Below, piece by piece: positions 43 to 63,906 of a stretch of DNA of 64,000 nucleotides. Both the position numbers and the translations under genes were made by a program. The stretch is taken from positions 88,365,180 to 88,429,179 of the forward strand of contig NC_068990.1 of assembly GCF_001194135.2 (NCBI RefSeq). The letters run 5' to 3'. Numbering within the stretch: position 1 is the stretch's first letter; every line of letters begins with the position of its first letter. The stretch is from Octopus bimaculoides (Eukaryota). The notes beneath the pieces were generated by a model. The model had not been told where the DNA came from, made no database searches, and saw only the letters and a list, made by a program, of their open reading frames with translations.

Positions 43-273
43 CTGACAAGCCGTTGCAGATTAAAAAAGTTAGCATACAAGAGAAGGATACTATTGGAAG
101 GCTTAGAAATGTGGACTTAAAGAAGTGTAATGAAGCTTGCTATCAGTATGTGCGATGTAATTCTTATCAGTACAATGAGAATGCGAAATTGTGTGATCTG
201 AGCAATGTAACTCAGATAACTGCTAACTTGAAACCCAACAATGGAAGATGGGATGTACACGTGATTAGCGCAG
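43..273 (+). CDS. Exon A1, PAN/apple-like domain type A
   Basis: ttcttcag|ct acceptor, g|gtctgt donor, 231 nt. [76 protein letters not shown]; C-x3-C-x5-C-x11-C PAN spacing. Confidence 0.9.
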
Positions 274-467
274 GTCTGTAGAGTGTTTCCATTTAACTTA
301 TCATATGTGTCAGTGTGTACTTATATGTATATGTGTATGTAATGTGTGTGTTTGTAGATATATCATCATCATCATCATTTAACATCTGTCTTCCATGCTT
401 GGATGGGTAGGATGGTGGACATGAGCTGGCCCCAGCTACTGTGTCTGTTTTGGCAGATTTTATATAT

Positions 468-3900: not shown

Positions 3901-5131
3901 CAAATTGTTTTGCTCAAGAACACAACATGCTGCCTGGTCTGGGAATCAAAGCCATGATCTTAGTGATCATGTGCGCAGCAGCCTAACCACTAGGCCACGT
4001 GCCTTCATACACACACACACATAAACATTCANNNNNNNNNNAGCAGCCTAACCACTAGGCCACGTGCCTTCATACACACACACACATAAACATTCATTTA
4101 TGTATCTGTTTATATCTGTGTACATATTTCATCTGTTTGTCTCAGTCAATATATTTTATTTCAAATTTGTCATTATTTTCTCATATTCACCCTCATTCTC
4201 ACATATATTAACCATTGATCTCAATTTCTCTGATCACTTCCAGCTTTCACAATAACTGACTGCGGACGTCCAAAAGACATTGTTGGCGCATCAATATCTT
4301 ACAATTCCACCACCTATAAATCTGAAGTGATCTATACATGTCCAGGAGGAGAAAAATTAAAATCAGAATGTAAGAAGGATGGTGAATGGGCCCCATTGTC
4401 ATCTGGTTGTAAAGGTAATGTAAAAAGGCTCTCTCTTGTTGCTCTTGCCTACAGAATTTTGTTTTTATTTTTGTGTTAAGTTTTTTTGTCTGATGAAGCA
4501 TTGCTGTGTCCATGACAGTTCCTGTTATGTTTATGGCTAATGGAAAAGAAAGAGGAGGCTATCCTGACACCTGAGACATTCATTATTTAATTATGTTACA
4601 TCAAATTAATCTACAATTTCCTTATTTTATATTTTGCCTTTTAATATTATACACACCAGTCAGTTGTTTTAAATTGTTTGCATATATACGTTATGATGTA
4701 GATATGTCTCTATATATTTATATTTATGTGTATTTATGTATTATAGGTATGTATGTATATGCATGTATGTGTGTGTATGTATACATATGCGTGTGTGTAT
4801 ATATGTGTGTATGTATATATATTTCCACTACTTTCTGTTCACATGCAGCTCCTTCTACGTATTCTTGCCCAGTTGCTGAATGCTGATGCATTGCTAAGTT
4901 AAGATTCTCTCGTTTTTTTTTGATCTTTCATATATTCGTTCGCCATTAACTCTTTCAATGTATTACTTACTAACAGTTAGTTTCAGAAGCTAACCATTTA
5001 AACTGACCTTTCAATATATAACTTCTTCATCTCTCATGTAATTTCGTTAAGATAATTACTTGTTTCTTGGTTTGTTTAATTTCTTGTTTCTTTGGTTTAA
5101 TTTCTAATCTGCCATGAACACTCTGAATGTA

Positions 5132-6103: not shown

Positions 6104-9100
6104 CTTGCTTATATATGTCTGTATATGCATGTAGCTATGTACATGCGTCTGAGAAACTTAGTTTTTGTGTTATTTTTGCTGCTTTTTGTGTTATTTTTCA
6201 CATTGTTTCACATTTATGTGCTTACTCTGGTGCACATATATATATCTATATATATAGATATATATATGTATATATATATCATCATCATCATCGTTTAATA
6301 TCCGCCTTCCATGCTAGCATGGGTTGGACGATTTGACTGAGGACTGGCGAACTCGATGGCTGCACCAAGCTCCAATCTGATATGGCAGAGTTTCTACAGC
6401 TGGATGCACTTCCTAACGCCAACCACTCCGAGAGTGTAGTGGGTGCTTTTACGTGCCACCGGCACTGGCAACAACCTCGCTCGAATGTTTTGTCATGTAC
6501 CACTGGCACAAGTACCAGTAAGGCGATGCTGGTAACGATCACGCTCAAATGGTGCTTTTTACGTGCCACTGCACAGAAGCCAGACAGCTGCTCTGGCAAT
6601 GATCACATTCGGACTGTGCTGTTAGTGCTCCACTGGTACAAGTTCCATCATGATTCGATTTCGCTTGCTCCAACAGGTCTTCACAAGCCGAGTTTAGTGT
6701 CCAATGAAGGAGATGTTGGCATGGGTGCCAGTCGTCGAGTTTGGTTCGATTTCGATTACACTTGCCTCTACAGGTCTTTGCAAGCAGAGTTTAGTGTCCA
6801 ATGAAGGAAAGGTACGCATAAGTGGGCTGGCTACACCCCTGGCAGAGGCCTCGGATTATGGTCTCACTTGGCTTGCTGGGTCTTCTCACGCACAGCATAT
6901 TTCCAAAGGTCTCAGTCACAAGTTATTGCCTCGGTGAGGCCTAATATTCAAAGGTCGTGCTTCACCACCTCATCCCAGGTCTTCCTGGGCCTACCTCTTC
7001 CACAGGTTCCCTCAACTGCTAGGGTGTGACACTTTTTCAGACAGCTATCCTCATCCATTCTCGCCACATGACCATNNNNNNNNNNNNNNNNNNNNNNNNN
7101 NNNNNNNNNNNNNNNNNNNNNNNNNNNNNNNNNNNNNNNNNNNNNNNNNNNNNNNNNNNNNNNNNNNNNNNNNNNNNNNNNNNNNNNNNNNNNNNNNNNN
7201 NNNNNNNNNNNNNNNNNNNNNNNNNNNNNNNNNNNNNNNNNNNNNNNNNNNNNNNNNNNNNNNNNNNNNNNNNNNNNNNNNNNNNNNNNNNNNNNNNNNN
7301 NNNNNNNNNNNNNNNNNNNNNNNNNNNNNNNNNNNNNNNNNNNNNNNNNNNNNNNNNNNNNNNNNNNNNNNNNNNNNNNNNNNNNNNNNNNNNNNNNNNN
7401 NNNNNNNNNNNNNNNNNNNNNNNNNNNNNNNNNNNNNNNNNNNNNNNNNNNNNNNNNNNNNNNNNNNNNNNNNNNNNNNNNNNNNNNNNNNNNNNNNNNN
7501 NNNNNNNNNNNNNNNNNNNNNNNNNNNNNNNNNNNNNNNNNNNNNNNNNNNNNNNNNNNNNNNNNNNNNNNNNNNNNNNNNNNNNNNNNNNNNNNNNNNN
7601 NNNNNNNNNNNNNNNNNNNNNNNNNNNNNNNNNNNNNNNNNNNNNNNNNNNNNNNNNNNNNNNNNNNNNNNNNNNNNNNNNNNNNNNNNNNNNNNNNNNN
7701 NNNNNNNNNNNNNNNNNNNNNNNNNNNNNNNNNNNNNNNNNNNNNNNNNNNNNNNNNNNNNNNNNNNNNNCTTAAACTTGAAGTGTTGTAGCAGCAGCAA
7801 CAATTGCAGTAATGAGTTTCTATTCATTTGCCTATTTTGACATGACTTATTGCTGGTACAGCACTGTGTTTCACAAGGGATGTTATGTTTTACATAACAC
7901 GGTATACAAAATAACGGAGAGAAAATTGGTAATCTACAGAGTCATGTGTTTTCTACATTCTGACATGGTTGCTATGGCTAGATGCCCTTTCTATCACCAA
8001 CCGTTATACCACATGAAGAAAGCACATCTTCTCATGTTGCTAGAATTAGAGAAACTTTACTAGGACTCAAAATTACTTTACCTTATATAGGTTTGTATTC
8101 AGAGTTGTTCCATTGCATTAAACGCATAAGAGCCAGCAAATTCACTGTTTGCTCTTAAAGATTTTGTGTATTCTTTTTGAAATCCTTCAACCTCGAAATC
8201 CTAGGCATAAGGGAAAATTCACTAGGTTTATTGATCTTAATATTAAGATACTTGTGCATGCAAGTAGAGCATTACTATCATGATAAACCTTTTGGGCCAA
8301 AAAGAAAGTTCAGCTATTTCTCTGTATAACTATAAGGAACTCGAACTAGGCTGGAAGAAAGATATTACTGCAATATTTACCCTTGGCCCCTCAAGAAGTT
8401 GAAACTTGTTCACAGATAATTTTCATACAGAGACATTTCAACTAATTTGAACAGCCATCCCATAAAGAGACAGGAATCAAGAAACTTGATTCAAACATAA
8501 AGATTACTACTAGCTACATTCAACTAAGTGGACATTATTTTAGAATTGATGTTCTGTATCCAGCAAATAATACTCTATATAAAACCTAGCAAGGAGAACA
8601 GACACCTTCCTAAGAATTCTGGCAATTTCCCCTTGTAGCATTGCTACCAGGGGAAATTGCTAGTTCATGATAACCACTGCTGGGATAGAACTGCTGTGTG
8701 CCTTGCAGGTTCAAGTTGTGTGCTAAATGATAAAACTGTTTTGCAAGGAGTTGTCTTGTGCCTCAGTATCCCTGACTTGTTGAGTTATTTCAAACACTTG
8801 CTTTGATGTGTAGTAGAGATTTGGCTGCCAGTGAGATCCATTGTGAAGATCGTCCTAATGTCTTCCTTTGACTGGAAAAACAGGCAATCATTAACAATCT
8901 AGTGGTTTTAGCAAAAGAAGTTTGTGTGGTGGACTAAACTGAAAGGGCTGAAGACCTAATGCTTTCCTCTTTGGCCAAGCTCTCAGCACATTTTTCAAGC
9001 TTCACTTGAGAAGAAACAAAAAGTGGTGTCACCTTCCAGCTAATTATTTGAAAGGTAGTGGCAAACAACAAGTGAATGCACCAACCCTGAGCATGTGCTA

Positions 9101-10362
9101 GTAGATTGAAGAATGATAAGTAGGAGAGTGTGCTCTAACTTTAGTGGTTAACATGATCATTTTTTAAGATCGCATGGTTGTAACAAGAGACATCTCAGTT
9201 GATCATATGTTAAAGGAAGTTTTTACCCTACAAAAGCACACTATCAGGTTAGTGATGTACAAAGAATTGTCTGCAACCTAGAAATTGAGACAAGTTTTAA
9301 AATGAGTCTTAAAGATGTTCTAAGACTTAGGTGAATTGTCTTGTAAATTATGGATCATTTTGTGAATCAGTTGTCAGTGTATAATGCACATGTGTGGGTA
9401 TATGAATGTACATGTCAGCATATAAAATGTATTCTTTCTTCTTTTTCTTCTAGCCAATAATGAACATTTCATGCTTAAAAAAGTTAGCATACCAGTGGGG
9501 GATATTTTAGGACAGCGTAAGAACAAGACCTTAAATGAATGTAATGAAGAATGCAACAGACATCATGGATGTAAATCTTACCAGTACAATGAGGAAAGTA
9601 AATTATGTGTTCTGAGTAATGTGACTCAGTGGACTGTTGAACTTACACTCAACAAAAAATCTGTGGATGTGTACATAGCTAACCCTGGTCAGTAGACTAT
9701 TTTCATCTTATTTATTGTATGCATGTGTTTGTGCATTTGTGTGTGTGTGTGTGTTGCAATGCTGCATGGCAGTGAGACATGGGCTTTGATCGCAGAAGAC
9801 ATGAGAAGACTAGAGAGAAATGAATCGAGCATGCTCTATTCACTATGCAAACGTGTGCATATATGACGTAGTATAAATGTACTGAATGCAAAACTGGGTT
9901 TAAAGAGAAATCAGATGTAGTGTGCAAGAAAGAAGACTGTGCTTGTATGGACATGCTATGCATATGGATGACTAAAGATGGGTAGAGTTTGTGGATGGGG
10001 GAGATGCAGGAAGACATGGGATGGAGTACTGATGGCTGACCTCAGGACACTGAATCTCAAAGAAGAGATGACAGAGTACTGCAATGTTTAGCAATATGTG
10101 GTTTTTAAGAAGACTTGCCCTTTACTGTACAACTGATTTCTGGCAGCACTGGGTTAGTATTGTGTGTGTGTGTGTGGGTGCATGTGGGTGTGTGCATGCA
10201 TGTGTGTGTGTGTACAAATAGGCATTTCACTTAGAATAAGGCAATTCTAATAGGCAATGTACATCATTGCCTATTAGAATAAGGTTTTTACGATATATTT
10301 ATTTTCTAGAGGGTATGAATTACATTCTTCATTATTGAATTGTTTAATAGTGGTTTTTCTCT

Positions 10363-32800: not shown

Positions 32801-32915
32801 ACTCAGTTGACTACTGAAATTAAACCCAACAATGGAGGCTGGGATGTATACATAATTAATCCCGGTTAGTAGAGTGTTTTATCTTAGTCATTGTGTGCAT
32901 GTTTTTGTGTATAAA

Positions 32916-52300: not shown

Positions 52301-55300
52301 GATGATGATGATAATGTCACCAGCAATTTTAGCTGTTTTCACTTTACTTTCAACAATTACCCTCGAGAACAGTACCTTCATTTCTATCTTCACTTTCTTT
52401 GCAAGTGAAACTTTCAATATACAAATTAAGAACTGAACAAAATAGGAAAGTCCTAGTCATCAGATATTATCCACCACAAAAACAGAGAAAATATGCCTTT
52501 TCTGCCAAGTTAAAGGAAAGTATGGGTCAGTCATCATGATGGACTCAGTGGACAGCCAGATCTGTCCCGTACACAGTAGTTTCTGTTTGACATAACTCTA
52601 TATTCCATCAATACATGAAAAATGACTATCTGAATGATAAATGTTTTGTTGAACCAAGTGCATCATGAACAGGCCTGTCTGATGGTGCTTCCAGCCCTCT
52701 CATAGCTCTGCAAAGCAAGGACTTCAAGAAGATGATCATTGTATTCTGACCATAATTCCTTCAAAACAAGCTTGCTAGTTTGTTTCCTTTAATGCCCAGA
52801 GCAATACTTTAGAATGTCTGTTCTCTATCCCTCAATAGATTGTTAGTGTGTAACATCTGTCAATACTACTGCCCATGTCAGGTTTCATCCAGCATGCTAT
52901 GTCTTCTGAAATTCTTAGAATTACATTAGATAATGTGAACTAAACTCTATAAGATGCTTGCATGTGATTGAAAGACATTTTATCAATATTTCTAAGAAGT
53001 CAGGCATCAACATAGAAGATTCCACAGTGACTGCTGCATAATAAATGTTGAACTCAATATTGCAATATAATTAGTCTGACACAGCTTATATATTAGTATA
53101 ATCTATTGCTTTGTTCAACATCCCCATCTGGCCCTTTAGGTTGTCATGACAGTGGTGGTGGACTGCATTCACACTGACCACAGAAGCTCAGGCTGGGTCT
53201 GGACCATATTAATCTCACAAGTGTAGTAAGGAGAGTGACCTCAGTTTTTCGTAACATAAGTGCTTCTGCCATGACTAGCTTATTATAAGATATAAGTACT
53301 ACCTCATGGTACTCTGTTATATTTTCCTCATTTAAGTCTATGGCCAAACATAAGAGATAGCAATAAGATTTTGTGATATTCATGTCTTTTTCAAGAGCAT
53401 TCACTGTCTATGTAAACTGAACTGGCTTGGACTGAGAATTAAACTCAAATCATTATTTCATCATTATTTTAATGCTCATTTTCCCTGCCTGAATGGTTGG
53501 ATGGAGTTTATTGATGCAGATTTTCTGCAAGTGAATGGCTTTCCTGTTGCTAAGTAAGGTAATATTTTTCTATGGCCACATATGTTCTTGCAAAAATAGG
53601 ACATAAGTGTCACTGCATGTATGACAGAGACAATTGTACAACTGTTACATGACATCAAGACACAGACAAACATACAGACTTACACATGCACACACTTACA
53701 CACACATACGCATATACACGCATATACGTACATGATAGGGTTCCTTTAGTTTCTGCTCCCAGATCCACTCACAAGGCTTTGGTTGGCCCAGGGCTATAGT
53801 AGAAGACACCTTTCCAAAATTCCATACTGTGAGATGGAACCTGAAACAATATGGTTGGTATGTGAACTTCTCACTACATGGTCATGCCTGCTCCGTTCAG
53901 TTCATATTTATACTAAAAGAACAACTACAGAAAAATATTCAGGGTTATTTCTGTTTCTTTGTTCTGTTGTATTTAAATATTATAATATTATAATTCTTTA
54001 CAGTTAAATACAGTTTAACTACTAAAAAAAAAAATTGGGACTAATTGTAAAGTGGTTACTTATTCAACAAAGATGATAAAAGTATTATGTTAATGACTTA
54101 TTCTGGTTAAGAAATTCAGAAGAGATATCCTGGATAAAGATAATCAACTTTCTTTCGTCTCATTAAAGTATAGGTTTTATGCTGTGGAACTCCATATTTA
54201 CTACATATTTATATTGGTCCACTAATTGATGGAAATGAAAATAATTTTGTTTTCCAAAGCAAATCATTGAAAAATCAGGGAAGAACTATTTAAATTTAGT
54301 TACATCTTTTTACATTCTAGGTTTAAATCCCACTTGAATGTGTGTCACCTTTCATACTTCTGAGATTAATAAAGCAAGTACTAGTCAAATGCTGAGTTTC
54401 ATTTATTTTCATGTATCCTTACTAAAGAATATGTGCCATTGTGTTTAATTTAGAAACCATTATCAGTAATATTGTTACCATCAATATTTATTATAATTAT
54501 TATCATTATTAAGGATGAAGGATAAAGAGAATCATTTGAGCATCAGACAAAATGTTTTGTGATATTTTTTTCTCACTCCTATAACTTCTTAGTTATCTTG
54601 ACTTTTATGAACTTTGCCTTTCCAGTCAAGGGCCAATAACTTAAAATGCCAGTTAATGTAGAGGTCAATTTAATCAACCATTTCCTTAATCAAAGTTTTG
54701 GTCTACATCCTATATTAGAAATATTGATATTACTTTTCATCACTTTAAATTTTGTTTTAATTCTAGCTACCGAGATCCATTTTATAAAAATAAAATATGC
54801 CTTTCTGGATATAACTGGAAAAACATTTTTGAAAAACAAAAAAGTAACAGCAGAAGCATGTGCAGAAAAATGTTTGTCTGACAAAACTTGTTTATCATTT
54901 GAAATAAATAAAGAAAATAAGAACTGTTACTTATCAAAGGAAAGTGCAGCTACCTCCAACAAGTTAAATCCAACCAAAAACAGTGATTACTACCAACGAA
55001 TAATACGTAATTAATTTTTGTTTTATTATTGGATTTTCTTTTTCTGAATTTTGTACTTCATAGTATAAAGACAACCATTTCTGTTATAACATCAACAGAT
55101 TTACTTGTAGGGACAGATATACCAATTGACCCAGAAAGATCTACCTCATATTTTTTTAATCACACATACAACAGAGGGCAATCAAACTTCCTAAATTATA
55201 AGGACTATATTTTACTTACCTAACAAATGAATTGGATTTCAATATGACCACCTGTTGCTTTAATCATGGCCTACAAATGTGTGGTTACTGAACTGCAACA

Positions 55301-56215: not shown

Positions 56216-59200
56216 AAGTGTTTATGTTTCAGTACCAAATGTATTTCTTGTTTCCTGTTTTATTTTTTCAGCCAGTCAAGAATTTTTTATATTTAGAAAA
56301 GTTAGCATGCCTTGGCAAGTTACTTTAGGACAGATTACAGGAATGAGCTTAAAGAGGTGTAATGCAACTTGCCATCAATATCCTGGGTGTCACAGTTATG
56401 CATACAAGCAGGAAAATAAGGTCTGTGTATTGAGTAGGATTACTCAGTCGAGTGATAAACTTAAATCCGACCAGGGAAGTTGGAATGTAAACATAATGAA
56501 CCCAGGTCAGTTGCGTATTTTCATCTTATTTATTGTTTTCATCTTATTTATTGTTTTCATCTTATTTATTTTGTGCATCTTATTTATTGTTTTCATCTTA
56601 TTTATTTTGTGCATCTTATTTATTGTATTTTCATCTTATTTATTGTGTATTTATATCATCATCATCATTTAACCATTTCATTACTATATTTCTGACCAAA
56701 ATACACCCCTCATGAGTTTCAATTAAATTCTAAAATAATCATGAATTTAGACTAGTTTCATTAAACAACTGTACCCTTTTTTTACTTATCAACATATTAA
56801 TGTGACATTTGGAACATAATTGAAGAAAGGGTTCTTAATCAATTCTATTGCATAATTTTTGTCTCAAAGTGACTCTAATTACAGGTAAACCCAGGTAAAC
56901 TGAGCAAAATGTAAAAATATTAAAATTTTGTTTAAACATTATCATAGAAAATGAGTCATCTGCTAATATTTAATTGGGTATGCAACAAAATTTTGATATA
57001 GAAGAATTGTGCACATCACTAGATTATCAGTTGAATTTAATACACAGAGGAACAGGTGTACCATAAAGGTAAAATAAACTGAAATACTGGAATTTGTTTT
57101 TGAAGAAAACTAGAAAATTAAATACATCAACTAAATGAAATATACTCACACACATACATGAATACACAGGAACATATATAATAAAGATTTACAATAGAAG
57201 TTAAATCAAAACTCGTCACTCACCTTATAAGTAAATTAAAATTATAGGTTAATTAAGATTACAGGTAAATTAAAATAAAAAGTAAAACTAAGTAAATTTG
57301 AAAAATATTTATACAATCTAATTATACATATATACAAACAATATTCACACAATATTTCTATCATGGAAAGTTGTAAAACATCCCACGCTACATACTGCAA
57401 CCTTGCAGAATGCACATTGGAAAGACGTTTCAATTGGCTGTCCACTGGGAGTTTTTCTTTGTTGATGTAGACATTCACAGCACCGTCTTTTGCGACCCCT
57501 GATTTTTTCTAATTTATGTAGATCAGTTGAACTTAGAGGAATATCTCTCTGGCAGGCTTTGCTTTTCCTTCCTGCAGTTATTTTTTGGAGGAATAACCTG
57601 CCCTCAACTGTATTGCTATATCTGCTCAGAACTGCAGATGGTTACACTGCTTGCGAACCCCTCCTGATTTGGTATATAATATAAATACATTTACAATGCT
57701 CATGTTTACTATATACCAAACCAGGTATTGCCACCATTTATTACCCGGTCTACCAACCGGATAATAACTCATCATCTGGTTCAGCCGATCCACACCGTCC
57801 ATGTACCTGTTATAATCAAGGTTCCCAAACGGGGTGCCATTTTCATCTACACATGGTTGTGCACTGGTAGATAGAAAATTTATCTGCCTCTTATCTCTGT
57901 ATGCAGTTGCTAGCAGATATCCTTTCTGCCGTTGAATTATTTCACCTCTTTTTTTTAAATTTTGCTTTTTTTATATCCAACGGCAGCCCTTTTCTACTAG
58001 CGATTACTGTAGCACATGTATACATTGCCACAGCTTCTAAATCCACTGCAAGTTTGCCTGAACTAAAAAATCGGTCAAAAAATAATATATGGCCCTGGTT
58101 ATGGTATGGAAGTGATAATTCCAGACCACATCGTACTCTAGGCCATGCTGACTAACATTATTGTTAGTCAGCTGTAGAGACCATGCCAAATGACACTAGA
58201 GTCTGGTGCAGCCCCTCCGTTTATCATCCCTCGTCAAACCAGCATAATCAATGGATGTTAAAAGATGGTACAGTATTATATATATTTTTGTAAAAATGAG
58301 TAGAGATGTTTTTTTGGTGGGGAAAATTTTAATTTTAATCTTGATAATGTTTAAATTGAGTTACTGTGATATGAGTTTCAAGCTTCAAAGAGCCATTTTC
58401 AAACTGAAAAATGTATGTTTTACTGGTTGCTTAAATAGCAAAAGATATTTTTCTTACAAGTATACATAAAAAATATATACACATATAGAAAAAAAGGAAA
58501 AGCAAAATATTTATAAAAAAATACAAAATCATGAAGAACAACAACATAAGAAAAGAAGAAAGAAGATGAAGAAGAAGAAGAAGAAAAAAACAAATGAAAT
58601 CAAGAAAAAATAAAAAGGAATATATAAATAAAAATAAAGATAAGACTAATAGTAATTGAGAACAGTGGAGAGGAGAGTTAAGTCCATCAAGAATAAAGAA
58701 ATAGAATATTTTGGAGTGGTCAATATTGTTGTGTTCTTGTCAAAAGAATATATATGTACACACACACACATCATGTATATACACTCACACACAAACATAC
58801 ATAGTTACATAGACACACATATGTATACTTTTATATCTGTGCAAATATCTACGTTTAGTGTAACATTGTTTATTATCTCATTCTCAGCCACCTATGTCAA
58901 TTTCTCTCTTCAATTCCAGGTTACTCAAACATTAACTGTGGACCTCCAAAAGATGTTTCTGGTGCAGTGAAGTCCTACAGAACCACAACCTATAAATCTA
59001 CAGTCATCTACACTTGTCCAAATGGAGAACAGCTAAAGTCAGTATGTAATATGGAAAGCAAATGGACTCCAGTTGCATCTTCCTGTTTTGGTAGTATAAA
59101 TAGCTTCTCTCTTGTTCTTTCTATCTGTTTTTATGCTAAATGTTTTGTCTGAAGAAGACTGGCTTACACTTCGTGAATTTCTAGTGTTTCTGGCTAGTGG

Positions 59201-62200
59201 GAGGGAGAGAACTAGTTATCCTCAGAGCAGAGACCTCCCCAAATGCTTGCTGCAGTAGATTCCATTAATTATACCCAAGGGCAACATAATTCTATGAAAT
59301 CAGATAATGGATTAAGTTTACCAACCAAGAGTTGGAAGTGTAGAAACTTGTTGTCTCCAGCAATCTTTGATATAGTTCACATCCACTAAATTTCATCCAC
59401 AAGCTTAGTTGTGAACCAAATTCTTAACCACACAGATAAAACTCTTAATTTTTCTCTTAATTTCTAACTTTGTCTTTCTCATCCATACTTTGTGTCATCA
59501 GTTGAAACCCAGCACAATATAATGCCCTGAGTCCTTCTTTACTAAAACTCTGCAATCCTCTGAAACAGACATCTGATCCTCATGTTCTTTTCCAGTACAC
59601 TATAACACCAATAATAAAAAATTCCCAATTGACACACAAAGACAAAAAATTTAGATAGTAGTTTAGTCAATATCATCAACCTTACGATTTGACTGGTAAT
59701 TTATGTCATGGGCACCTACAGGTACGACAGGCAATGTTGACTTTCATTTCATTTGAAGTGATATTCGAAAGAGCCTGAATATATAACATACAGCATTGCT
59801 TCCAGTTCTCTAATTAGTACACATGTATACATTGAAAATAAAAATAAGGATGATGATACAGTTCTCTCAATGAAGAAGGATCACTCTAGGATCAGTTGAA
59901 GAATCCTACCATCAAAGATCACCACAAACTCCATGGACATGTATCTTCTCCAGTTATTGCTCTCAGACCAACACTTTTAGCTCACTTTCAATAATTTGTC
60001 TTGAGGACCATACCTTCCTCTCTATCCTCAACTTCTTTACAAGTGAAATTTGTAAATGCAAATTAGGGATTATCTAAAGAGGCAAGTTACTGTCATCTGA
60101 CATTTTGAAACTCCTCCACCTTGCAATCTCTTTTTCTACCACTGCCACACAGAGGAAAACCATCTTCTCTGCCCAATTAAAGGAGATGGACTTGACTGAT
60201 AGGTTGATCCATTCCACTCACAACAGCATGTTTGACATAAATGCACAAGTGAACAATACATGGATGATGACAGAGTACATACAAAATGATTTTTCTATAC
60301 TGCTGACATCTTGGGCAAGCTTGTCTAATGGCACTTCCATGTCATGTATCTTCATTGCAGAATACGTGGCCTTGTGTTCAAGTTAGAAACCATTAAATTT
60401 AATATTGTTACTATGAACAATACTTATAATTATTCTTGTCTATCAGACAAAATGTGATGTAGTATTTGTTCTGACCCTAACTTCTGAGTTCAAGCCCTGC
60501 TGATGTTAATTTTGCCCATTTAGGGCCATTAAAATAAAATGGCATTCATGTGTTGAGGCCACTTTAGCAGACGAATTCTAATCTCAAAATTTTGGCCTTC
60601 TTTCTAGGTTAGTAATTTTTTTTTTCTTGTTATATTTCATTCATCTAAATTTTGCTTTAACACTAGATACTGTGACGATCCATTTTATAAAAATAAGCAA
60701 CGCATATCTGAGTGTACCTAAGAAAACATTGTGGAGTAAGGAAACTAAAAGAATAAAAGGCTGTGCAGAAGTATGTTTTTCTGACAAAAAATGTTTATCA
60801 TTTGAAATAATTAAAAAAAGTGGACTATGTTACTTATCAAAGGAAAGTGCAACTTCTACCAATGAATTAAAGTCAACCAAAGATAGAGATTACTACCAAC
60901 GTTTAAAAGGTAATTATTGTTTTGTATTTTATTATTAGATTCTTTTTACATCTTCTGAAATTTATGATTCCTTTTGTACTCATAATACATAGACAACCAT
61001 TTCTGTGAAGATATTGACAGGTTTACCTCTGAAGACAGGCATAGACATATTCCTGAAAATATGTCAGAAAGTGAAAATATTGTTACAGCATTCTGTGGGA
61101 AAGGAAAATCCCATATTCTTAAACATGAGCAGCAGCAACAGTAGCAGTAGTGGCAGCAATAGCAGTAGTAGTAGTGGCAGCAGCAGTTGCTGTAGTCATA
61201 GTAATGGTGGCTGTGGTGTATCTGTAGATTTTATGATACCTGTGCATTTTCCACATATAAACACTACTGTCTCTCTTAACCTTCCTATTATTCTACTGTA
61301 CCTCTTGTGTGTCCATAGCTTGCACTGGGTACATCATATGAAATTCCTGCCTACTTCTTTCCTACTTATCAAACAGGGCCATTTAACTGAAGCAGGTAGG
61401 AACCTGTCTGTTTCTTGCTTACGAGAACCTTGGTCTTTGCTAAGTTAAACTTAAGGCCTTTTGATTCCAGGTTTTTCTTCCACACCTGGAATTTCTTTTT
61501 CATTTCTGTTCCAGAATCTGCTATGAGAACACCATCAGTTTGTAGTTTCCAAGAGCAGCCAGTTTTGAATTCCTCTGTTATTGCCAGAGGACAGTGATGA
61601 ATAGGAGGGGACTGAGAGTCAAGCCCTGGTGAATGTCTGCTTGTACACTAAATTCATCACTGACTCATGGTTAACTCTTACATTACCGTACATGGCCTGT
61701 ACAGCTTTCACAAGATACTCTTCTACCCCTAGCTTTCTCAGGGTCCACCATATCACACAACAGGGTACTCTATCTAAGGTTTAAAAATATATATATATAT
61801 ATTTATTTATGTATGTATGCATACACACACACACACACACACATATGGTGGGTTGTGTATTTGTTTCTGTGTGTAACTAAATATTAATATTTTCATGTAC
61901 ATTCTCTCTCTTGAAACTTTGTTTTCTGTCATTTTGACTGATATTTTTGCTGTTGACTGCTATTTCTAGCTGATTACGTGCTATGTCACCCGATTTGACA
62001 AAATATGACTAGTCCATTTTTCACAGGGATGAAACTGGAACTGTTGATAAAGGCAAACTTTACAAGTGAAAACTCTTTTGGTCAACAACAACAGCACTCT
62101 TTGTGAAGGAGAACAGACAAGAAAAAGTATACAAACAAATAACAACACTGACAATAAACAAACTGTAAACACTCCAAAGTTTCTTATGTGTGATTTGACA

Positions 62201-63611: not shown

Positions 63612-63906
63612 TGTGCGTGTGTGTTTGGGTGGACGAGTATAAAATATATTTCTTGTTTTTCTCTTTTTCCAGTCGCTGAAAAAAATTTGTTGCTTAAACA
63701 AGTTACCATACCAGAGAAGTATGTCTTTAGACGGTTTGGGGACATGACCATAAAGAGTTGTGATGGAGCTTGCCAGCAATATCAAGAATGTAGGTCTTAT
63801 AAGTACAATGTAAAAGATAAACTGTGTGCTTTGAGTGGTTTATCACACGTGACTAATAAAATTATACCTACCAGTAGCAGCTGGGTCATAAGAATGGTTT
63901 ACGCAG
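43..63906 (+). CDS. Multi-exon gene (or tandem gene cluster) encoding a repetitive extracellular protein built from PAN/apple(A)-Sushi/CCP(S)-PAN/apple(B) modules; no clear start or end in the window
   Basis: 32 exons located by hand, all AG..GT bounded, all phase 1-1, lengths multiples of 3, no internal stops. Junction codons in genomic order are sense. Summed length 6765 nt = 2255 codons. Whether they form one transcript is inference. Confidence 0.8.
961..1260 (+). mobile_element. Degenerate 3' end of an RTE-clade (BovB-like) LINE
   Basis: Hand translation with stops gives [40 protein letters not shown], resembling the RTE C-terminal RMxDxRIPKQLLFGEL...RFKDTLK segment. Boundaries approximate. 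Confidence 0.65.
1590..2480 (-). mobile_element. Degenerate RTE-clade LINE, endonuclease to N-terminal reverse transcriptase
   Basis: Minus ORF 1605-1865 [15 protein letters not shown]...[23 protein letters not shown]...[10 protein letters not shown] is the typical pre-RT segment. An APE motif MGDFNARIG reads on the minus strand at ~2262-2288. Confidence 0.8.
3390..3830 (-). mobile_element. RTE-type LINE 3' fragment / associated short repeat
   Basis: Minus [18 protein letters not shown]. Contains the recurrent ctacagctagatgcctttcctaatgccaaccact motif also seen at ~5400, 6390, 11700, 23570, 33500 and 52170. Confidence 0.7.
4244..4414 (+). CDS. Exon S1, Sushi/CCP domain
   Basis: cacttccag|ct acceptor, g|gtaatg donor, 171 nt; not in ORF track. 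[56 protein letters not shown]; 4 Cys plus Trp, CCP pattern. Confidence 0.9.
5146..5185. repeat. (TAT)n microsatellite; many (TA)n, (CA)n, (TAGA)n, (CT)n and (CCT)n tracts occur throughout introns
   Basis: Direct reading, e.g. (TA)n ~6040-6098 and ~16580-16640, (CCT)n ~13110-13147, (CT)n ~23220-23272, (TAGA)n ~23783-23835. Confidence 0.95.
6277..7075 (-). mobile_element. Well-preserved RTE-type LINE 3' end with (GAT)n tail, running into the assembly gap
   Basis: (cat)n at ~6277-6292 followed by the recurrent repeat. The minus strand next to the gap reads [41 protein letters not shown]. Confidence 0.75.
7076..7770. other. Assembly gap (N run); others at 4032-4041, 10400-10647, 50237-50278
   Basis: Runs of N in the sequence. 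Confidence 0.99.
9454..9687 (+). CDS. Exon A2, PAN/apple-like type A
   Basis: ttcttctag|cc, g|gtcagt, 234 nt. [77 protein letters not shown]. Confidence 0.9.
9750..10110 (+). mobile_element. RTE-type LINE 3' fragment just after exon A2
   Basis: gtgagacatgggctttgatcgcagaagacatgagaagactagagagaaatgaa ([17 protein letters not shown]). Homologous pieces at ~16900, 22250, 32985 and 50530. Confidence 0.7.
10891..11061 (+). CDS. Exon S2, Sushi/CCP domain
   Basis: catttccag|tt, g|gtaatg, 171 nt. [56 protein letters not shown]. Confidence 0.9.
11340..11800 (+). mobile_element. Recurrent RTE-associated 3' repeat with internal sub-repeats (aaaaagcacc units) and (GAT)n tail
   Basis: Repeated gcatgtaaaaagcacca units, then gttggcattaggaagggcattcagctgtagaaactctg and a gatgatgat tail. 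Confidence 0.65.
12623..12793 (+). CDS. Exon S3, Sushi/CCP domain (second of a doublet)
   Basis: ttcaattacag|at, g|gtaatg, 171 nt. [56 protein letters not shown]. Confidence 0.9.
13150..13500 (+). mobile_element. Mariner transposase C-terminal fragment
   Basis: [32 protein letters not shown] contains the mariner YSPDLAPxD catalytic-aspartate motif. Confidence 0.85.
14080..14316 (+). CDS. Exon B1, PAN/apple-like type B
   Basis: tgactctag|at, t|gtaatt, 237 nt. [78 protein letters not shown]; C-x3-C-x5-C-x11-C. Confidence 0.88.
14686..14886 (+). mobile_element. tRNA-derived SINE with (TA)n tail
   Basis: tggctatgtggtaag...gggttcagtcc A/B-box-like head, body ccaaagccttgtgagtggatttggtagatggaaac, TA tail. 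Reverse copies at ~27700-27870 and ~53745-53890. Confidence 0.75.
16238..16468 (+). CDS. Exon A3, PAN/apple-like type A
   Basis: ttttaccag|ct, g|gtcagc, 231 nt. [76 protein letters not shown]. Confidence 0.9.
17716..17886 (+). CDS. Exon S4, Sushi/CCP domain
   Basis: catttccag|tt, g|gtaagg, 171 nt. [56 protein letters not shown]. Confidence 0.9.
18330..18680 (+). mobile_element. RTE-type LINE fragment in the S4-B2 intron
   Basis: Reads approximately [11 protein letters not shown]...[26 protein letters not shown], an RTE post-RT segment also seen at ~22130 and ~50390. Confidence 0.65.
18778..19014 (+). CDS. Exon B2, PAN/apple-like type B
   Basis: caattccag|tt, t|gtaatt, 237 nt. [78 protein letters not shown]. 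Confidence 0.88.
21324..21557 (+). CDS. Exon A4, PAN/apple-like type A
   Basis: tttctctag|ca, g|gtcagt, 234 nt. [77 protein letters not shown]. Confidence 0.9.
22120..22630 (+). mobile_element. RTE-type LINE 3' fragment
   Basis: ORF-track peptides [14 protein letters not shown]...[10 protein letters not shown]...[10 protein letters not shown] and [17 protein letters not shown]...DGTCGKGR. Confidence 0.8.
24564..24734 (+). CDS. Exon S5, Sushi/CCP domain
   Basis: caattccag|at, g|gtaaca, 171 nt. [56 protein letters not shown]. Confidence 0.9.
26536..26772 (+). CDS. Exon B3, PAN/apple-like type B
   Basis: taactctag|at, t|gtaatt, 237 nt. [78 protein letters not shown]. Confidence 0.88.
27700..27870 (-). 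mobile_element. tRNA-derived SINE (reverse orientation)
   Basis: Reverse-complement homology to the 14686 element (aaggctttggttggccc...tagtagaaggcacttacccaaagtg...accatgtggttg). Confidence 0.7.
27981..28211 (+). CDS. Exon A5, PAN/apple-like type A
   Basis: tattttcag|ct, g|gtcagt, 231 nt. [76 protein letters not shown]. Confidence 0.9.
28486..28656 (+). CDS. Exon S6, Sushi/CCP domain
   Basis: tcactttag|tt, g|gtaatg, 171 nt; not in ORF track. [56 protein letters not shown]. Confidence 0.9.
30230..30466 (+). CDS. Exon B4, PAN/apple-like type B
   Basis: tgactctag|aa, t|gtaatt, 237 nt. [78 protein letters not shown]. Confidence 0.88.
30547..30960 (+). mobile_element. Mariner element terminal fragment with inverted-repeat end, inserted ~80 nt after exon B4
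   Basis: ta|cgagggtaggctgaaaagttcatag terminal sequence, similar to the end of the 43965 element (gaaggtcagctgaaaaattcatag), which carries a mariner transposase fragment. Confidence 0.6.
31330..31620 (-). mobile_element. RTE-type LINE endonuclease N-terminal fragment
   Basis: Minus [14 protein letters not shown]...[18 protein letters not shown] matches the APE endonuclease start (xNV...xQETRW). Confidence 0.75.
32631..32864 (+). CDS. Exon A6, PAN/apple-like type A
   Basis: ttcttccag|tc, g|gttagt, 234 nt. [77 protein letters not shown]. Confidence 0.9.
32960..34055. mobile_element. Two RTE-type 3' fragments (plus at ~32960-33350, minus at ~33385-34055) filling the A6-S7 intron
   Basis: Plus: [17 protein letters not shown]. 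Minus: [27 protein letters not shown]...[17 protein letters not shown]. Confidence 0.75.
34104..34274 (+). CDS. Exon S7, Sushi/CCP domain (first of a doublet)
   Basis: tatttccag|tt, g|gtaatg, 171 nt; not in ORF track. [56 protein letters not shown]. Confidence 0.9.
35798..35968 (+). CDS. Exon S8, Sushi/CCP domain (second of a doublet)
   Basis: caatttcag|tt, g|gtaaca, 171 nt. [56 protein letters not shown]. Confidence 0.9.
37125..37364 (+). CDS. Exon B5, PAN/apple-like type B
   Basis: taattccag|ac, t|gtaatt, 240 nt. [79 protein letters not shown]. Confidence 0.88.
38535..38765 (+). CDS. Exon A7, PAN/apple-like type A
   Basis: tcttttcag|ct, g|gtcagt, 231 nt. [76 protein letters not shown]. 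Confidence 0.9.
39586..39756 (+). CDS. Exon S9, Sushi/CCP domain
   Basis: cacttccag|tc, g|gtaatg, 171 nt; not in ORF track in this frame. [56 protein letters not shown]. Confidence 0.9.
40775..41011 (+). CDS. Exon B6, PAN/apple-like type B
   Basis: taattctag|tt, c|gtaatt, 237 nt. [78 protein letters not shown]. Confidence 0.88.
42920..43153 (+). CDS. Exon A8, PAN/apple-like type A
   Basis: cttttctag|cc, g|gtcagc, 234 nt. [77 protein letters not shown]. Confidence 0.9.
43965..44560 (-). mobile_element. Mariner transposase fragment with terminal inverted-repeat end
   Basis: Minus [18 protein letters not shown]...[22 protein letters not shown] contains mariner-like HQDN and YSPDL motifs. Confidence 0.85.
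45239..45412 (+). CDS. Exon S10, Sushi/CCP domain with a one-codon insertion
   Basis: aaattctag|tt, g|gtaatg, 174 nt; not in ORF track. [57 protein letters not shown]. The indel preserves frame. Confidence 0.9.
48136..48375 (+). CDS. Exon B7, PAN/apple-like type B
   Basis: taattccag|tt, t|gtaatt, 240 nt. [79 protein letters not shown]. Confidence 0.88.
49590..49810 (+). mobile_element. SINE (second family), ~110 nt upstream of exon A9
   Basis: caaaatgcttagtggcatt...cattctgagttcaaattcc...gtcaactttgctttcatc...gataaagtaaatacc. Older degenerate copies lie upstream of most B exons. Confidence 0.65.
49920..50153 (+). CDS. Exon A9, PAN/apple-like type A
   Basis: tttttccag|cc, g|gttagt, 234 nt. 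[77 protein letters not shown]. Confidence 0.9.
50350..50960 (+). mobile_element. RTE-type LINE fragments (3' segment followed by a pre-RT segment)
   Basis: [24 protein letters not shown] and [49 protein letters not shown] similar pre-RT piece lies at ~24090-24250. Confidence 0.85.
51162..51332 (+). CDS. Exon S11, Sushi/CCP domain
   Basis: cacttccag|tt, g|gtaatg, 171 nt; not in ORF track. [56 protein letters not shown]. Confidence 0.9.
52095..52310 (+). mobile_element. Apparently young copy of the RTE-associated 3' repeat with (GAT)n tail
   Basis: gcacccactacactctcggagtggttggcgttaggaagggcatccagccgtagaaactctgcc is a near reverse complement of the 6300-6460 copy; CpGs retained. Confidence 0.75.
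54767..55006 (+). CDS. Exon B8, PAN/apple-like type B
   Basis: taattctag|ct, c|gtaatt, 240 nt. [79 protein letters not shown]. Confidence 0.88.
55380..55900 (-). mobile_element. Degenerate Tc1/mariner-superfamily transposase fragment
   Basis: Minus strand reads [31 protein letters not shown]...KVWPASSP, matching FQQDxAPAH...WPxxSPD. Subfamily (maT-like) is a guess. Confidence 0.65.
56272..56505 (+). CDS. Exon A10, PAN/apple-like type A
   Basis: ttttttcag|cc, g|gtcagt, 234 nt. [77 protein letters not shown]. Confidence 0.9.
56515..56650 (+). repeat. Short tandem repeat of catcttatttatt(g/t) units directly after the A10 donor
   Basis: About six copies of (tt/gtg)catcttatttatt. Confidence 0.85.
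56670..58260 (-). mobile_element. piggyBac-family transposon remnant in the A10-S12 intron
   Basis: Minus strand: [48 protein letters not shown] (PGBD core) and [11 protein letters not shown]...[20 protein letters not shown] (C-terminal Cys-rich domain). ttaa|ccatttc at ~56670 resembles a TTAA target with a terminal repeat; the other end was not identified. Confidence 0.85.
58920..59090 (+). CDS. Exon S12, Sushi/CCP domain
   Basis: caattccag|gt, g|gtagta, 171 nt. [56 protein letters not shown]. Confidence 0.88.
60667..60909 (+). CDS. Exon B9, PAN/apple-like type B
   Basis: taacactag|at, g|gtaatt, 243 nt. [80 protein letters not shown]. Confidence 0.88.
61590..61785 (-). mobile_element. RTE-type reverse transcriptase fragment
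   Basis: Minus strand reads approximately [29 protein letters not shown]...HQG..LSPLLFI (frameshifted). Confidence 0.75.
63148..63480. repeat. ~330 nt compound (GTT/GCT)n trinucleotide tract in the B9-A11 intron
   Basis: Direct reading; produces the spurious poly-Leu ORF 63127-63549. Confidence 0.95.
63673..63906 (+). CDS. Exon A11, PAN/apple-like type A
   Basis: tttttccag|tc, g|gtcagt, 234 nt. [77 protein letters not shown]. Confidence 0.9.

What the first reader, a model, noticed from the sequence alone, without database searches (positions are those of the whole stretch)
43..63906. Unrecognised (PAN-Sushi-PAN)n exon array encoding at least ~2250 aa of modular extracellular protein
Seen: 11 A, 12 S and 9 B exons, one domain per exon, in A-S-B order. 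All 32 keep frame, splice sites and four Cys while their introns have accumulated transposons, which is the pattern expected of purifying selection. Established: PAN/apple modules (plasminogen, HGF, factor XI family) and CCP modules (complement regulators, selectins) are disulfide-bonded extracellular binding domains. N-x-T/S sequons (NVT in 8 of 11 A copies) fit a secreted or surface glycoprotein. Inference: I know no named gene with a strictly alternating two-PAN/one-CCP repeat of this length. It may be a lineage-specific multivalent recognition or adhesion system (immune, gamete or secretory-gland role unknown). Several S exons are missing from the ORF track, so automated annotation could fragment it.
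Basis: partly seen in the sequence, partly recalled or inferred. Interest (0 to 1): 0.9.

Follow-up and report, generated by a model that had tools for sequence, protein, structure and literature searches.

The report
Giant octopus PAN–Sushi–PAN exon array
The window is the middle of a very long, Octopus-specific run of exons, each coding one small disulfide-bonded binding module (PAN, Sushi, PAN, repeated about 50 times across the locus), which existing genome annotation chops into unnamed fragments and which appears to be an amplified piece of a neighbouring gene whose relative was described from octopus venom-gland cDNA.

Summary
On the + strand there are 11 A (PAN), 12 S (Sushi/CCP) and 9 B (PAN) exons. 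All have AG/GT splice sites, phase 1-1 and 4 Cys, and they splice into 2254 aa with no stop. The order is A-S-B, except for two A-S-S-B units and one unit whose B exon is almost certainly hidden in the 695-N gap. All four gaps are intronic.

The window is Octopus bimaculoides chr CM046610.1, about 88,365,180-88,429,179. It is the interior of an array that continues both ways, an estimated 50 units over at least 0.3 Mb. Annotation splits it into at least 5 "uncharacterized" models (1133, 709, 1865, 761 and 4083 aa), and four intact window exons (three whole, one almost whole) lie in no model.

Whole-unit relatives are found only in Octopus. The B-A-S block has the same exon plan as the nearby GON-domain gene, whose Abdopus relative is named GON-Abd-1.

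Selection keeps the frame, the Cys and the scaffold (ω 0.25), while the other residues evolve at about the neutral rate (ω 1.08).

The most likely product is a giant secreted, multivalent binding protein. Its tissue, ligand, gene ends and splicing pattern remain unknown. I rate it a new variant of a known kind, of moderate interest.

The parts
43..273 (+). A exon (PAN), unit 1
   Evidence: AG/GT, phase 1-1, 4 Cys, NVT
4244..4414 (+). S exon (Sushi/CCP), unit 1
7076..7770 (.). 695-N assembly gap that most likely hides the B exon of unit 1 (predicted at about 7216-7449)
   Evidence: paralogous block L001 aligns from exactly 7771 onward, and its B exon lies 322-555 nt upstream of that point
9454..9687 (+). 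A exon, unit 2
10891..11061 (+). S exon, unit 2 (first of a doublet)
   Evidence: the RefSeq model P0001 of the paralogous block includes both S exons of the corresponding doublet
12623..12793 (+). S exon, unit 2 (second of the doublet)
14080..14316 (+). B exon (PAN), unit 2
16238..16468 (+). A exon, unit 3
17716..17886 (+). S exon, unit 3
18778..19014 (+). B exon, unit 3
21324..21557 (+). A exon, unit 4
24564..24734 (+). S exon, unit 4
26536..26772 (+). B exon, unit 4
27981..28211 (+). A exon, unit 5
28486..28656 (+). S exon, unit 5
30230..30466 (+). B exon, unit 5
32631..32864 (+). A exon, unit 6
34104..34274 (+). S exon, unit 6 (first of a doublet)
35798..35968 (+). S exon, unit 6 (second of the doublet)
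37125..37364 (+). B exon, unit 6
38535..38765 (+). A exon, unit 7
39586..39756 (+). S exon, unit 7
40775..41011 (+). B exon, unit 7
42920..43153 (+). A exon, unit 8
45239..45412 (+). S exon, unit 8 (174 nt, one extra codon)
48136..48375 (+). B exon, unit 8
49920..50153 (+). A exon, unit 9
51162..51332 (+). S exon, unit 9
54767..55006 (+). B exon, unit 9. The annotated 1865-aa model ends here, consistent with reading through the donor to the stop at 55012-55014
   Evidence: (ORF 54646-55014)
56272..56505 (+). A exon, unit 10, in no annotated model
58920..59090 (+). S exon, unit 10, in no annotated model; O. vulgaris orthologue 80% identical over the 20 codons available at the locus edge
60667..60909 (+). 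B exon, unit 10, in no annotated model; O. vulgaris orthologue 74% identical
63673..63906 (+). A exon, unit 11. Model LOC128248840 (P0009) starts at an internal Met at 63894; O. vulgaris orthologue 85-86% identical

Best explanation
The window is the interior of a huge tandem exon array on Octopus bimaculoides chromosome CM046610.1 (window = about 88,365,180-88,429,179). The repeat unit is three exons, each coding one 4-Cys module: PAN type A, Sushi/CCP (sometimes doubled), and PAN type B. Every exon is phase 1-1.

Shown: the array continues without a break on both sides of the window. Gene models of 1133, 709, 1865, 761 and 4083 aa tile it, with intact exons left unannotated between them. The same array exists, unit for unit, in O. 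vulgaris, and A/S/B exons of the same kind occur at two O. sinensis loci 0.5 Mb apart.

Inferred: about 50 units, or 10-11 thousand residues, over at least 0.3 Mb, transcribed as one or a few very long mRNAs. The array arose by repeated tandem duplication of the B-A-S exon block of a GON-domain-type gene. That gene lies 230 kb upstream and has the plan signal peptide | B | A | S | GON, with the same exon boundaries. Later duplications copied multi-unit blocks.

Inferred mechanism: the product is a secreted, glycosylated, lysine-rich string of rigid disulfide-bonded PAN and CCP modules. It acts as a multivalent extracellular binder of carbohydrate or protein ligands, in saliva/venom, mucus or matrix. 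Selection preserves the reading frame, splice sites, cysteines and fold-determining residues, while surface residues change at about the neutral rate, so each unit may differ in what it binds. The tissue, the ligand, and the first and last exons are not known.
For: Anatomy: 32 exons with AG/GT, phase 1-1 and 4 Cys give a 2254-aa open product.

Domains: PAN_1, with a PAN/apple fold by AF2 plus Foldseek. CCP is supported by motif, by Pfam at threshold, and by exclusively CCP hits in the PDB.

Location and continuity: L002 positions 1-10107 equal window 53894-64000 at 100% identity. A/S/B exons continue downstream, again with unannotated exons between models, and occur upstream in L001. The flanking models of 1133, 1865 and 4083 aa all carry PAN/Sushi hits.

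Other species: O. vulgaris models of 4470, 861, 857 and 3597 aa lie in a row. The S/SS pattern is collinear with O. bimaculoides. O. sinensis loci lie 0.5 Mb apart.

Selection: between species the alignable intron flanks have 12.3 indels per kb, 45 of 63 not a multiple of 3, whereas all six scored exon indels are multiples of 3. Neutral simulation expects 14-21 stops and 13-18 Cys losses; none is observed, and 0 of 2000 simulations reached zero. Scaffold codons have ω 0.25 (p = 2e-5) and the other codons ω 1.08.

Origin: GON gene LOC106874924 lies at 88,124,138-88,134,746. It has one exon per domain and the same A donor context, CCAG|gtcagtagagtgtt. Cuttlefish has A-S-S-GON, and Argonauta has signal peptide-B-A-B-A.

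Product: no transmembrane-like run, pI 8.8, 12.4% Lys, and a positionally conserved NVT.
Against: I could consult no transcript or protein data, so splicing of these exact junctions, the number of transcripts and the tissue are all unverified.

No signal-peptide, first or last exon was found in the window or in the roughly 430 kb of related loci fetched, so secretion is inferred from domain types and from the GON paralogue only.

Overall dN/dS of 0.57-0.78 is high, and the variable class is statistically indistinguishable from neutral. Diversifying selection is therefore not shown.

An unrelated NDUFV1-like gene follows the GON gene, so the array is not simply part of that gene.

The Sushi fold could not be confirmed structurally.

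The venom-gland origin of GON-Abd-1 is from my memory of Ruder et al. 2013 (J Mol Evol), not from a paper I could read here.
Confidence: 0.6

Rival explanations
1. The array is a reservoir of interchangeable cassette exons. Because every exon is phase 1-1, any subset can be joined in frame, and alternative or mutually exclusive splicing (for example of the S-S doublets) yields many shorter isoforms rather than one giant protein.
For: All 32 exons are symmetric phase 1-1. S-S doublets recur. The O. vulgaris models P0008 and P0156 each span about 75 kb but use only about 860 aa. P0008 omits an A and a B exon that are intact in the DNA.
Against: Exon skipping in automated models may be annotation noise. 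The O. bimaculoides model P0001 includes both S exons of a doublet. The intron flanks carry no conserved elements beyond what neutral decay explains, so there is nothing like docking or selector sites. There are no transcript data.
Confidence: 0.17
2. It is a cluster of several separate genes, roughly as annotated, each with its own promoter and terminator and each encoding a protein of 700-4000 aa.
For: Annotation pipelines in three species each produced several models.
Against: Model ends coincide with artefacts. The 1865-aa model stops at the first in-frame stop after an unspliced B donor (window 55012-55014). P0009 starts at an internal Met of an A exon (window 63894). Intact conserved exons lie between models. 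No signal-peptide exon was found anywhere in the array DNA examined, although the homologous GON gene has one.
Confidence: 0.15
3. The exons are relics of a dead or dying repeat, a pseudogene array with no function, that merely look intact.
For: dN/dS is 0.78 overall and 1.08 for 70% of codons. Third codon positions are no less conserved than first and second positions among A paralogues.
Against: There are no stops, no frameshifts and no Cys losses in 16 complete orthologous exon pairs, where neutral drift predicts 14-21 stops and 13-18 Cys losses. About 39 indels would be expected from the intron rate of 12.3 per kb applied to 3.1 kb of exon. Scaffold codons have ω 0.25 (p = 2e-5). All 128 Cys are kept in 32 window exons that are only 25-78% identical to one another.
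Confidence: 0.03
4. It is an assembly artefact in which a short repeat was over-expanded by the assembler.
For: The window has four N gaps, one of them flanked by a duplicated overlap.
Against: The copies are highly diverged (25-78% aa identity), and each has different intron content. The same unit order, including the S/SS pattern, is found in an independent gap-free O. vulgaris assembly.
Confidence: 0.01

Closest known systems
Coleoid 'GON-domain' proteins: GON-Abd-1/2 of Abdopus aculeatus (UniProt R4G2C1, R4G7D0), O. bimaculoides LOC106874924, O. sinensis LOC115215708, O. vulgaris CAI9728787
   Same: They have the same three module types (PAN-B, PAN-A, Sushi) with recognisable sequence similarity (41-50% identity). 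In LOC106874924 the plan is also one domain per exon, with the same phase-1 boundaries and the same A donor context. The O. bimaculoides, O. sinensis and O. vulgaris genes are on the same chromosome as the array, 230 kb away in O. bimaculoides.
   Different: GON proteins are small (about 465 aa), with one B-A-S block, a signal peptide and a C-terminal GON domain. The array has dozens of blocks, and no GON or signal-peptide exon was found in about 490 kb examined.
Giant alternating-module Sushi proteins of vertebrates: CSMD1-3 (CUB-Sushi repeats) and SVEP1/polydom
   Same: They are very long extracellular strings in which a CCP module alternates regularly with another small disulfide-bonded module (established knowledge of the families). 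RefSeq-derived names call two fragments 'SVEP1-like'.
   Different: No CUB, vWA, EGF or pentraxin domain is present. The partner module here is PAN, and two PANs of distinct type flank each CCP. The 'SVEP1-like' name is not supported by domain content.
Multi-PAN/apple binding proteins: factor XI/prekallikrein heavy chain (4 apple domains), Toxoplasma MIC4 (6 apple domains), Sarcocystis lectin SML-2, leech anti-platelet protein LAPP, HGF N domain
   Same: They share the PAN fold (Foldseek probability 1.0). They use tandem PAN modules as protein- or carbohydrate-binding units in secreted proteins, and LAPP is a salivary protein (established knowledge).
   Different: Sequence identity is only 8-24%. 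A and B have the 4-Cys core PAN pattern, not the 6-Cys apple pattern. None of these proteins interleaves CCP modules or approaches this copy number.

Membership tests
PAN/apple superfamily (Pfam PAN_1, PF00024) | Sequence match to the family profile above the curated threshold | tested here: met
   An A exon scores 35.5 bits and a B exon 39.6 bits against a cut-off of 21.4. Six copies together score 158.9 bits.
PAN/apple superfamily (Pfam PAN_1, PF00024) | Beta-beta-alpha-beta-beta-beta fold resembling solved PAN/apple domains | tested here: met
   The AF2 unit model has mean pLDDT 79, with an E-E-H-E-E-E pattern in both A and B. Foldseek hits FXI/prekallikrein apple, MIC4, SML-2, HGF N and LAPP at probability 1.0.
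PAN/apple superfamily (Pfam PAN_1, PF00024) | Core disulfide pattern (4 Cys; apple domains proper have 6) | tested here: met
   C-x3-C-x5-C-x11-C is invariant in all 20 PAN exons. With only 4 Cys these are core PAN modules, not apple domains in the strict sense. Disulfide connectivity itself was not determined.
Sushi / CCP / SCR (Pfam PF00084) | Profile match above the curated threshold | tested here: inconclusive
   A single copy scores 19.8 bits and three copies 21.0 bits, against a cut-off of 20.7. The Sushi module of the cuttlefish relative scores 27.9 bits.
Sushi / CCP / SCR (Pfam PF00084) | Four Cys, Pro after Cys1, Tyr-x-Cys at Cys2, invariant Trp between Cys3 and Cys4, about 55-60 residues | tested here: met
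   C6, P9, Y30, C32, C42, W48 and C55 are invariant in all 12 S exons. A profile of the 12 copies hits only CCP proteins in the PDB: CR2 at 2.6e-10, MASP-2 at 7.6e-5, plus CR1, C1s, MCP and poxvirus complement inhibitors.
Sushi / CCP / SCR (Pfam PF00084) | CCP beta-sandwich fold | tested here: inconclusive
   The AF2 model of S alone has pLDDT 81 and is all-beta, but Foldseek gave no significant PDB match (best E = 0.5). The domain is too small for the method.
Coleoid GON-domain protein family (GON-Abd-1 type) | B-A-S module block with homologous sequence and exon structure | tested here: met
Coleoid GON-domain protein family (GON-Abd-1 type) | C-terminal GON domain (PF08685) | tested here: not met
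   tblastn with the GON part of P0005 finds nothing in the window (best E = 2.5) or in L001-L006.
Coleoid GON-domain protein family (GON-Abd-1 type) | N-terminal signal peptide | tested here: not met
   No signal-peptide exon is present in the window or L001-L006. The true first exon of the array lies outside the DNA I could fetch.
SVEP1 / polydom (the name given to fragments P0003 and P0156) | vWA, EGF, pentraxin and HYR domains together with Sushi repeats | tested here: not met
   Only PAN and Sushi families match the window product. The precomputed Pfam lists show PAN only (plus a faint MBD hit) for P0003 and PAN plus Sushi for P0156.

The most novel reading that the evidence does not exclude
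The whole array (about 50 units, 10-11 thousand residues, at least 0.3 Mb) is one Octopus-specific gene, among the largest animal coding genes. It would encode a secreted hypervariable multivalent recognition molecule of the salivary/venom or mucosal system. Its fully symmetric exons would additionally permit combinatorial isoforms, and its unit surfaces would diversify between species.
Probability: 0.2. Interest if true: 0.75.

Novelty: new variant of a known kind. Interest (0 to 1): 0.5.

Why it matters
First, it flags a large, badly annotated locus in the reference octopus genomes. At least five fragmentary "uncharacterized" models, one misleading "SVEP1-like" name and several intact exons in no model probably belong to one transcription unit. 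Transcriptome, proteome and gene-family counts for octopus are therefore currently wrong here.

Second, it is a clear natural example of protein evolution by exon-block amplification. A three-exon B-A-S cassette from a small secreted-protein gene was copied about 50 times, with a fold scaffold under constraint and surfaces free to change.

Third, if the product is expressed in the posterior salivary gland like its GON-domain relative, it would be a previously overlooked giant component of cephalopod saliva or venom. If it is expressed elsewhere (skin mucus, suckers, gametes), it would be a candidate lineage-specific recognition molecule.

Neither domain type nor the general design (long strings of small disulfide-bonded modules) is new, so the interest is moderate rather than high.

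Tried and rejected
1. I first treated L001 (the P0001 locus) as the orthologue from another species and computed 'orthologue' dN/dS. One search showed the window itself is O. bimaculoides, so L001 is a paralogous block 37 kb upstream. The analysis was redone with true O. vulgaris orthologues.

2. I searched for a GON-domain or signal-peptide exon in the window and in six related loci and found none.

3. I searched for a B-exon remnant in the readable DNA between 4414 and 9454 and found none. The B exon is predicted inside the gap.

4. The third homology search, meant to retrieve the 1133-aa and 4083-aa flanking models so I could walk to the array ends, did not return them. The ends remain unseen.

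5. I considered conserved intronic elements, such as Dscam-like docking sites, because 30-70 nt next to the exons look conserved among paralogues. I rejected this because the identity is no higher than at third codon positions of the exons, and the fall-off is explained by indels breaking the register.

6. Structural confirmation of the Sushi fold with S alone was uninformative.

7. P0004 ('metaclust', A-S-B-A without introns) was considered as transcript evidence. I rejected this because its UniParc-style number sits beside those of 2015 O. bimaculoides gene models, so it is probably a gene model.

8. Literature searches for the GON domain, PAN/apple domains, Sushi and the locus or accession numbers in cephalopod papers found nothing relevant.

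9. tRNA and Rfam scans of the window were empty.

10. The Pfam MBD hit on S exons is judged spurious: 26 residues, 23 bits.

Full report
OBSERVATION.

A six-frame scan with seed peptides, and then with HMMs built from the copies, finds three kinds of stop-free segment, all on the + strand.

Each segment is bounded by a polypyrimidine-AG acceptor and a GT donor at homologous positions. With those sites every exon length is a multiple of 3 (A 231/234; S 171, one of 174; B 237-243). Every exon starts and ends in phase 1 and encodes exactly four cysteines. The 32 exons concatenate to 6765 nt = 2254 codons without a stop. The first exon begins at 43 and the last ends at 63906, as stated.

The order is A-S-B with three departures. 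Units 2 and 6 carry two S exons in a row. Unit 1 has no B exon in readable sequence.

THE GAPS.

None of the four N runs touches an exon.

- 4032-4041 lies 203 nt before S4244 and is flanked by a ~55-nt duplicated overlap, which is a scaffolding artefact.
- 10400-10647 and 50237-50278 sit in (TA)n tracts inside introns.
- 7076-7770 lies in the S4414-A9454 interval, where a B exon is expected.

No B remnant exists in the readable part of that interval. The paralogous block L001 aligns to the window starting exactly at 7771 (= L001 22972), and its B exon lies 322-555 nt upstream of that point. The missing B exon is therefore predicted at about 7216-7449, inside the gap. Because exons are joined by splicing, the frame of the product does not depend on any gap length.

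DOMAIN IDENTITY.

A and B each match Pfam PAN_1 well above threshold: 35.5 and 39.6 bits against 21.4, and 158.9 bits for six copies. An AlphaFold2 model of one A-S-B unit has mean pLDDT 79. Its pTM of 0.39 is low, as expected for flexibly linked beads. It gives a strand-strand-helix-strand-strand-strand pattern in both A and B. Foldseek against the PDB returns factor XI/prekallikrein apple domains, Toxoplasma MIC4, the Sarcocystis galactose lectin SML-2, the HGF N domain and leech anti-platelet protein, all at probability 1.0. A and B share only about 27% identity. They have the 4-Cys core-PAN pattern rather than the 6-Cys apple pattern.

S matches Pfam Sushi only at threshold: 19.8 bits for one copy and 21.0 for three, against a cut-off of 20.7. 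It does have the invariant CCP signature C-G-x-P ... Y-x-C ... C ... W ... C. A profile of the 12 copies hits only CCP-module proteins in the PDB: CR2 at 2.6e-10, MASP-2 at 7.6e-5, and CR1, C1s, MCP and poxvirus complement inhibitors. A structure search with S alone was uninformative. I accept CCP on sequence grounds.

WHERE THE WINDOW IS, AND WHAT SURROUNDS IT.

Homology searches return only octopod proteins. Fetching the locus of one of them (P0009, O. bimaculoides LOC128248840) showed that its first 10,107 bases are 100% identical to window 53894-64000. The window is therefore O. bimaculoides GCA_001194135.2, chromosome CM046610.1, about 88,365,180-88,429,179.

The gene calls on that chromosome tile the region with PAN/Sushi models:

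- 1133 aa, ending at 88,284,128.
- 709 aa, LOC128248838, 88,292,203-88,317,768.
- 1865 aa, ending at window 55,014.
- 761 aa, LOC128248840, starting at window 63,894.
- 4083 aa, starting at 88,456,817.

The 1865-aa model ends at the first in-frame stop beyond the unspliced donor of exon B54767. The 761-aa model begins at an internal Met of exon A63673. Exons A56272, S58920, B60667 and most of A63673 lie in no model, although they are intact and conserved in O. vulgaris.

Downstream of the window the array runs on without a break: S-S-B, A-S-B, A-S-S-B, a degenerate A followed by S-S-B, then A-S. Again there are unannotated exons between models. Upstream, L001 shows S-S-B, A-S-B, A-S-B, A-S-B, A-S-S-B and more.

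From model lengths and exon density I estimate about 50 units (10-11 thousand residues) over at least 0.3 Mb.

OTHER SPECIES AND ORIGIN.

A profile of the whole unit searched against 1.84 billion representative proteins finds full-unit matches in only about nine proteins, all Octopus: bimaculoides, sinensis (XP_036361601, 2643 aa) and vulgaris. Below them come generic multi-Sushi or multi-PAN proteins.

In O. vulgaris, four consecutive models (4470, 861, 857 and 3597 aa) cover the array. The two short ones each span about 75 kb and skip intact exons. The first exons of locus L004 are the orthologues of the window's last three exons, at 80%, 74% and 86% identity (the 80% figure rests on 20 codons, because that exon is cut by the locus edge). 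The downstream S/SS pattern is identical in the two species.

In O. sinensis, two fragments lie 0.5 Mb apart on one chromosome, with further exons in their unannotated flanks.

The nearest small relative is GON-Abd-1 of Abdopus aculeatus, together with its Octopus orthologues: signal peptide, B, A, S, then a GON domain. The O. bimaculoides gene (LOC106874924) lies at 88,124,138-88,134,746, 230 kb upstream of the window. An NDUFV1-like gene lies right after it. It has one exon per domain, the same phase-1 boundaries and the same A-donor context.

A cuttlefish protein is A-S-S-GON. An Argonauta protein is signal peptide-B-A-B-A without Sushi. The simplest reading is that the array arose in the Octopus lineage by repeated tandem duplication of the B-A-S exon block of a GON-type gene.

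Within O. bimaculoides, later multi-unit block duplications are visible. L001 carries two copies of a block that is 85-92% identical in DNA, intron flanks included, to window 43-28211. Within the window the best paralogue of several A exons lies four units away, and the S-S doublets also recur four units apart. This hints at a four-unit higher-order repeat.

SELECTION.

Window paralogues are only 25-78% identical in protein sequence, yet all 128 cysteines and all frames are kept.

Between O. bimaculoides and O. vulgaris, 17 orthologous exon pairs (three from the window, the rest from the adjoining part of the array; 1065 codons) give dN 0.080, dS 0.102 and ω 0.78. By class, ω is 0.53 for A, 0.73 for S and 1.07 for B. 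That is far from classical strong purifying selection.

Even so, alignable intron flanks show 13% divergence and 12.3 indels per kb, and 45 of the 63 scored indels are not multiples of 3. The exons show 8.4% divergence, and the six scored internal indels are all multiples of 3.

Simulated neutral substitution at the observed divergence predicts 14-21 stop codons and 13-18 lost cysteines in these exons. None is observed, and 0 of 2000 simulations reached zero.

I then split codons using columns that are invariant in an independent set of O. vulgaris paralogues. This gives ω 0.25 for scaffold codons (p = 2e-5) and ω 1.08 for the remaining 70% (not different from 1, p = 0.71).

The exons are therefore functional and constrained for frame, disulfides and fold. 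Most surface positions evolve at about the neutral rate. The data cannot say whether that class hides positive selection.

PRODUCT AND LIKELY MECHANISM.

The window's share of the product is 255 kDa, with pI 8.8 and 12.4% Lys. It has no transmembrane-like run. It has 29 N-x-S/T sequons, against 22 +/- 4 in shuffles, and one NVT is positionally conserved in 8 of 11 A exons.

PAN modules are protein- or carbohydrate-binding units of secreted proteins, and CCP modules are protein-interaction units. This is established knowledge of the families, and the structural neighbours are all binders. I therefore propose a secreted, glycosylated, beads-on-a-string multivalent binder whose many units differ in surface.

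Its tissue is unknown. The only lead is that GON-Abd-1, to my memory, comes from posterior salivary (venom) gland cDNA (Ruder et al. 2013, J Mol Evol). I could not read that paper here.

The rivals are cassette-exon isoform diversity, several separate genes, a dead repeat, and assembly artefact. They are weighed in their own section. The last two are effectively excluded.

INTRONS.

Introns hold microsatellites and transposon remnants. There is a mariner-type transposase fragment (44390-44566, minus strand, Pfam Transposase_1, E = 8.6e-16) and a borderline piggyBac-like fragment (57626-57802, minus strand). Other suspected reverse-transcriptase-like ORFs gave no Pfam hit.

VERDICT.

The finding is real and was correctly read. 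It is a new architectural variant built from known module types. It is lineage-restricted, very large, poorly annotated, and not described in any paper I could find. What is missing is any expression or ligand evidence, and the two ends of the gene.

Noticed in passing
window 4032-4041 and flanks (about 3976-4097): The 10-N gap is flanked by the same ~55-nt sequence on both sides (agcagcctaaccactaggccacgtgcc...). These are unmerged overlapping contig ends. The true sequence probably lacks the gap and one copy.
   Followed up: partly
window 55,007-63,893: Four intact exons (A56272, S58920, B60667 and most of A63673) lie between two annotated models and belong to neither. The upstream 1865-aa model ends at a stop (55012-55014), consistent with reading through the B54767 donor.
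   Followed up: yes
L001 (CM046610.1:88,282,203-88,327,768) versus window 43-28,211: Recent multi-unit block duplications lie inside the array (DNA 85-92% identical including intron flanks; dS about 0.15). The window also shows a hint of a four-unit higher-order period: A43~A27981, A16238~A38535, A21324~A42920, and S-S doublets at units 2 and 6.
   Followed up: partly
window 44390-44566 (-), with adjacent ORF 43991-44356 (-): A mariner-type transposase remnant sits in the A42920-S45239 intron (Pfam Transposase_1, E = 8.6e-16). The adjacent ORF looks like the rest of the same element but gave no Pfam hit.
   Followed up: partly
window 57626-57802 (-): A borderline piggyBac-like transposase fragment (DDE_Tnp_1_7, 22.3 bits against a cut-off of 22.4) sits in the A56272-S58920 intron.
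   Followed up: no
window 63151-63478: A (TTG)n tract of 109 copies (83% matches), read as a 140-aa poly-Leu ORF, lies about 200 nt upstream of the last A exon and is followed by (GT)30 at 63565-63624. Many other (TA)n and (CA)n tracts fill the introns.
   Followed up: partly
S exons, e.g. window 24564-24734; also models P0001 and P0003: Pfam MBD (methyl-CpG-binding domain) scores 23.1 bits (cut-off 21) on a 26-residue stretch of an S exon, and it recurs as a 'faint' precomputed hit on several array models. This is almost certainly a false positive that could mislead automated annotation.
   Followed up: partly
P0003 (O. sinensis) and P0156 (O. vulgaris): Public names of the type 'sushi, von Willebrand factor type A, EGF and pentraxin domain-containing protein 1-like' are attached to array fragments that carry only PAN hits (P0003) or PAN and Sushi hits (P0156). 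The name is not supported by domain content.
   Followed up: yes
introns within about 30-70 nt of every exon (e.g. GTCAGTAGAGTGTTTCCATTT after A exons): Intron flanks are about as similar among paralogues as the exons, then fall to random identity. They are no more conserved than third codon positions, so this is explained by common descent plus indels rather than by regulatory elements.
   Followed up: yes
L007 (CM046610.1:88,114,138-88,144,746): The GON-domain gene is followed 5.5 kb downstream by an unrelated NDUFV1-like gene (Complex1_51K, NADH_4Fe-4S). At least one housekeeping gene therefore follows the putative source gene, in the interval toward the array.
   Followed up: no
P0023 (Argonauta hians GAB1601772.1): This is a small secreted protein with signal peptide-B-A-B-A and no Sushi or GON. 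It suggests the B-A di-PAN pair is the older building block among octopods.
   Followed up: partly
L002 32161-32298 (about 22 kb downstream of the window's right end): One A-type exon is truncated or degenerate (it matches only HMM positions 22-67), yet it is 96% identical to its O. vulgaris orthologue and keeps 4 Cys. The annotated model P0009 ends about 950 nt beyond it.
   Followed up: partly
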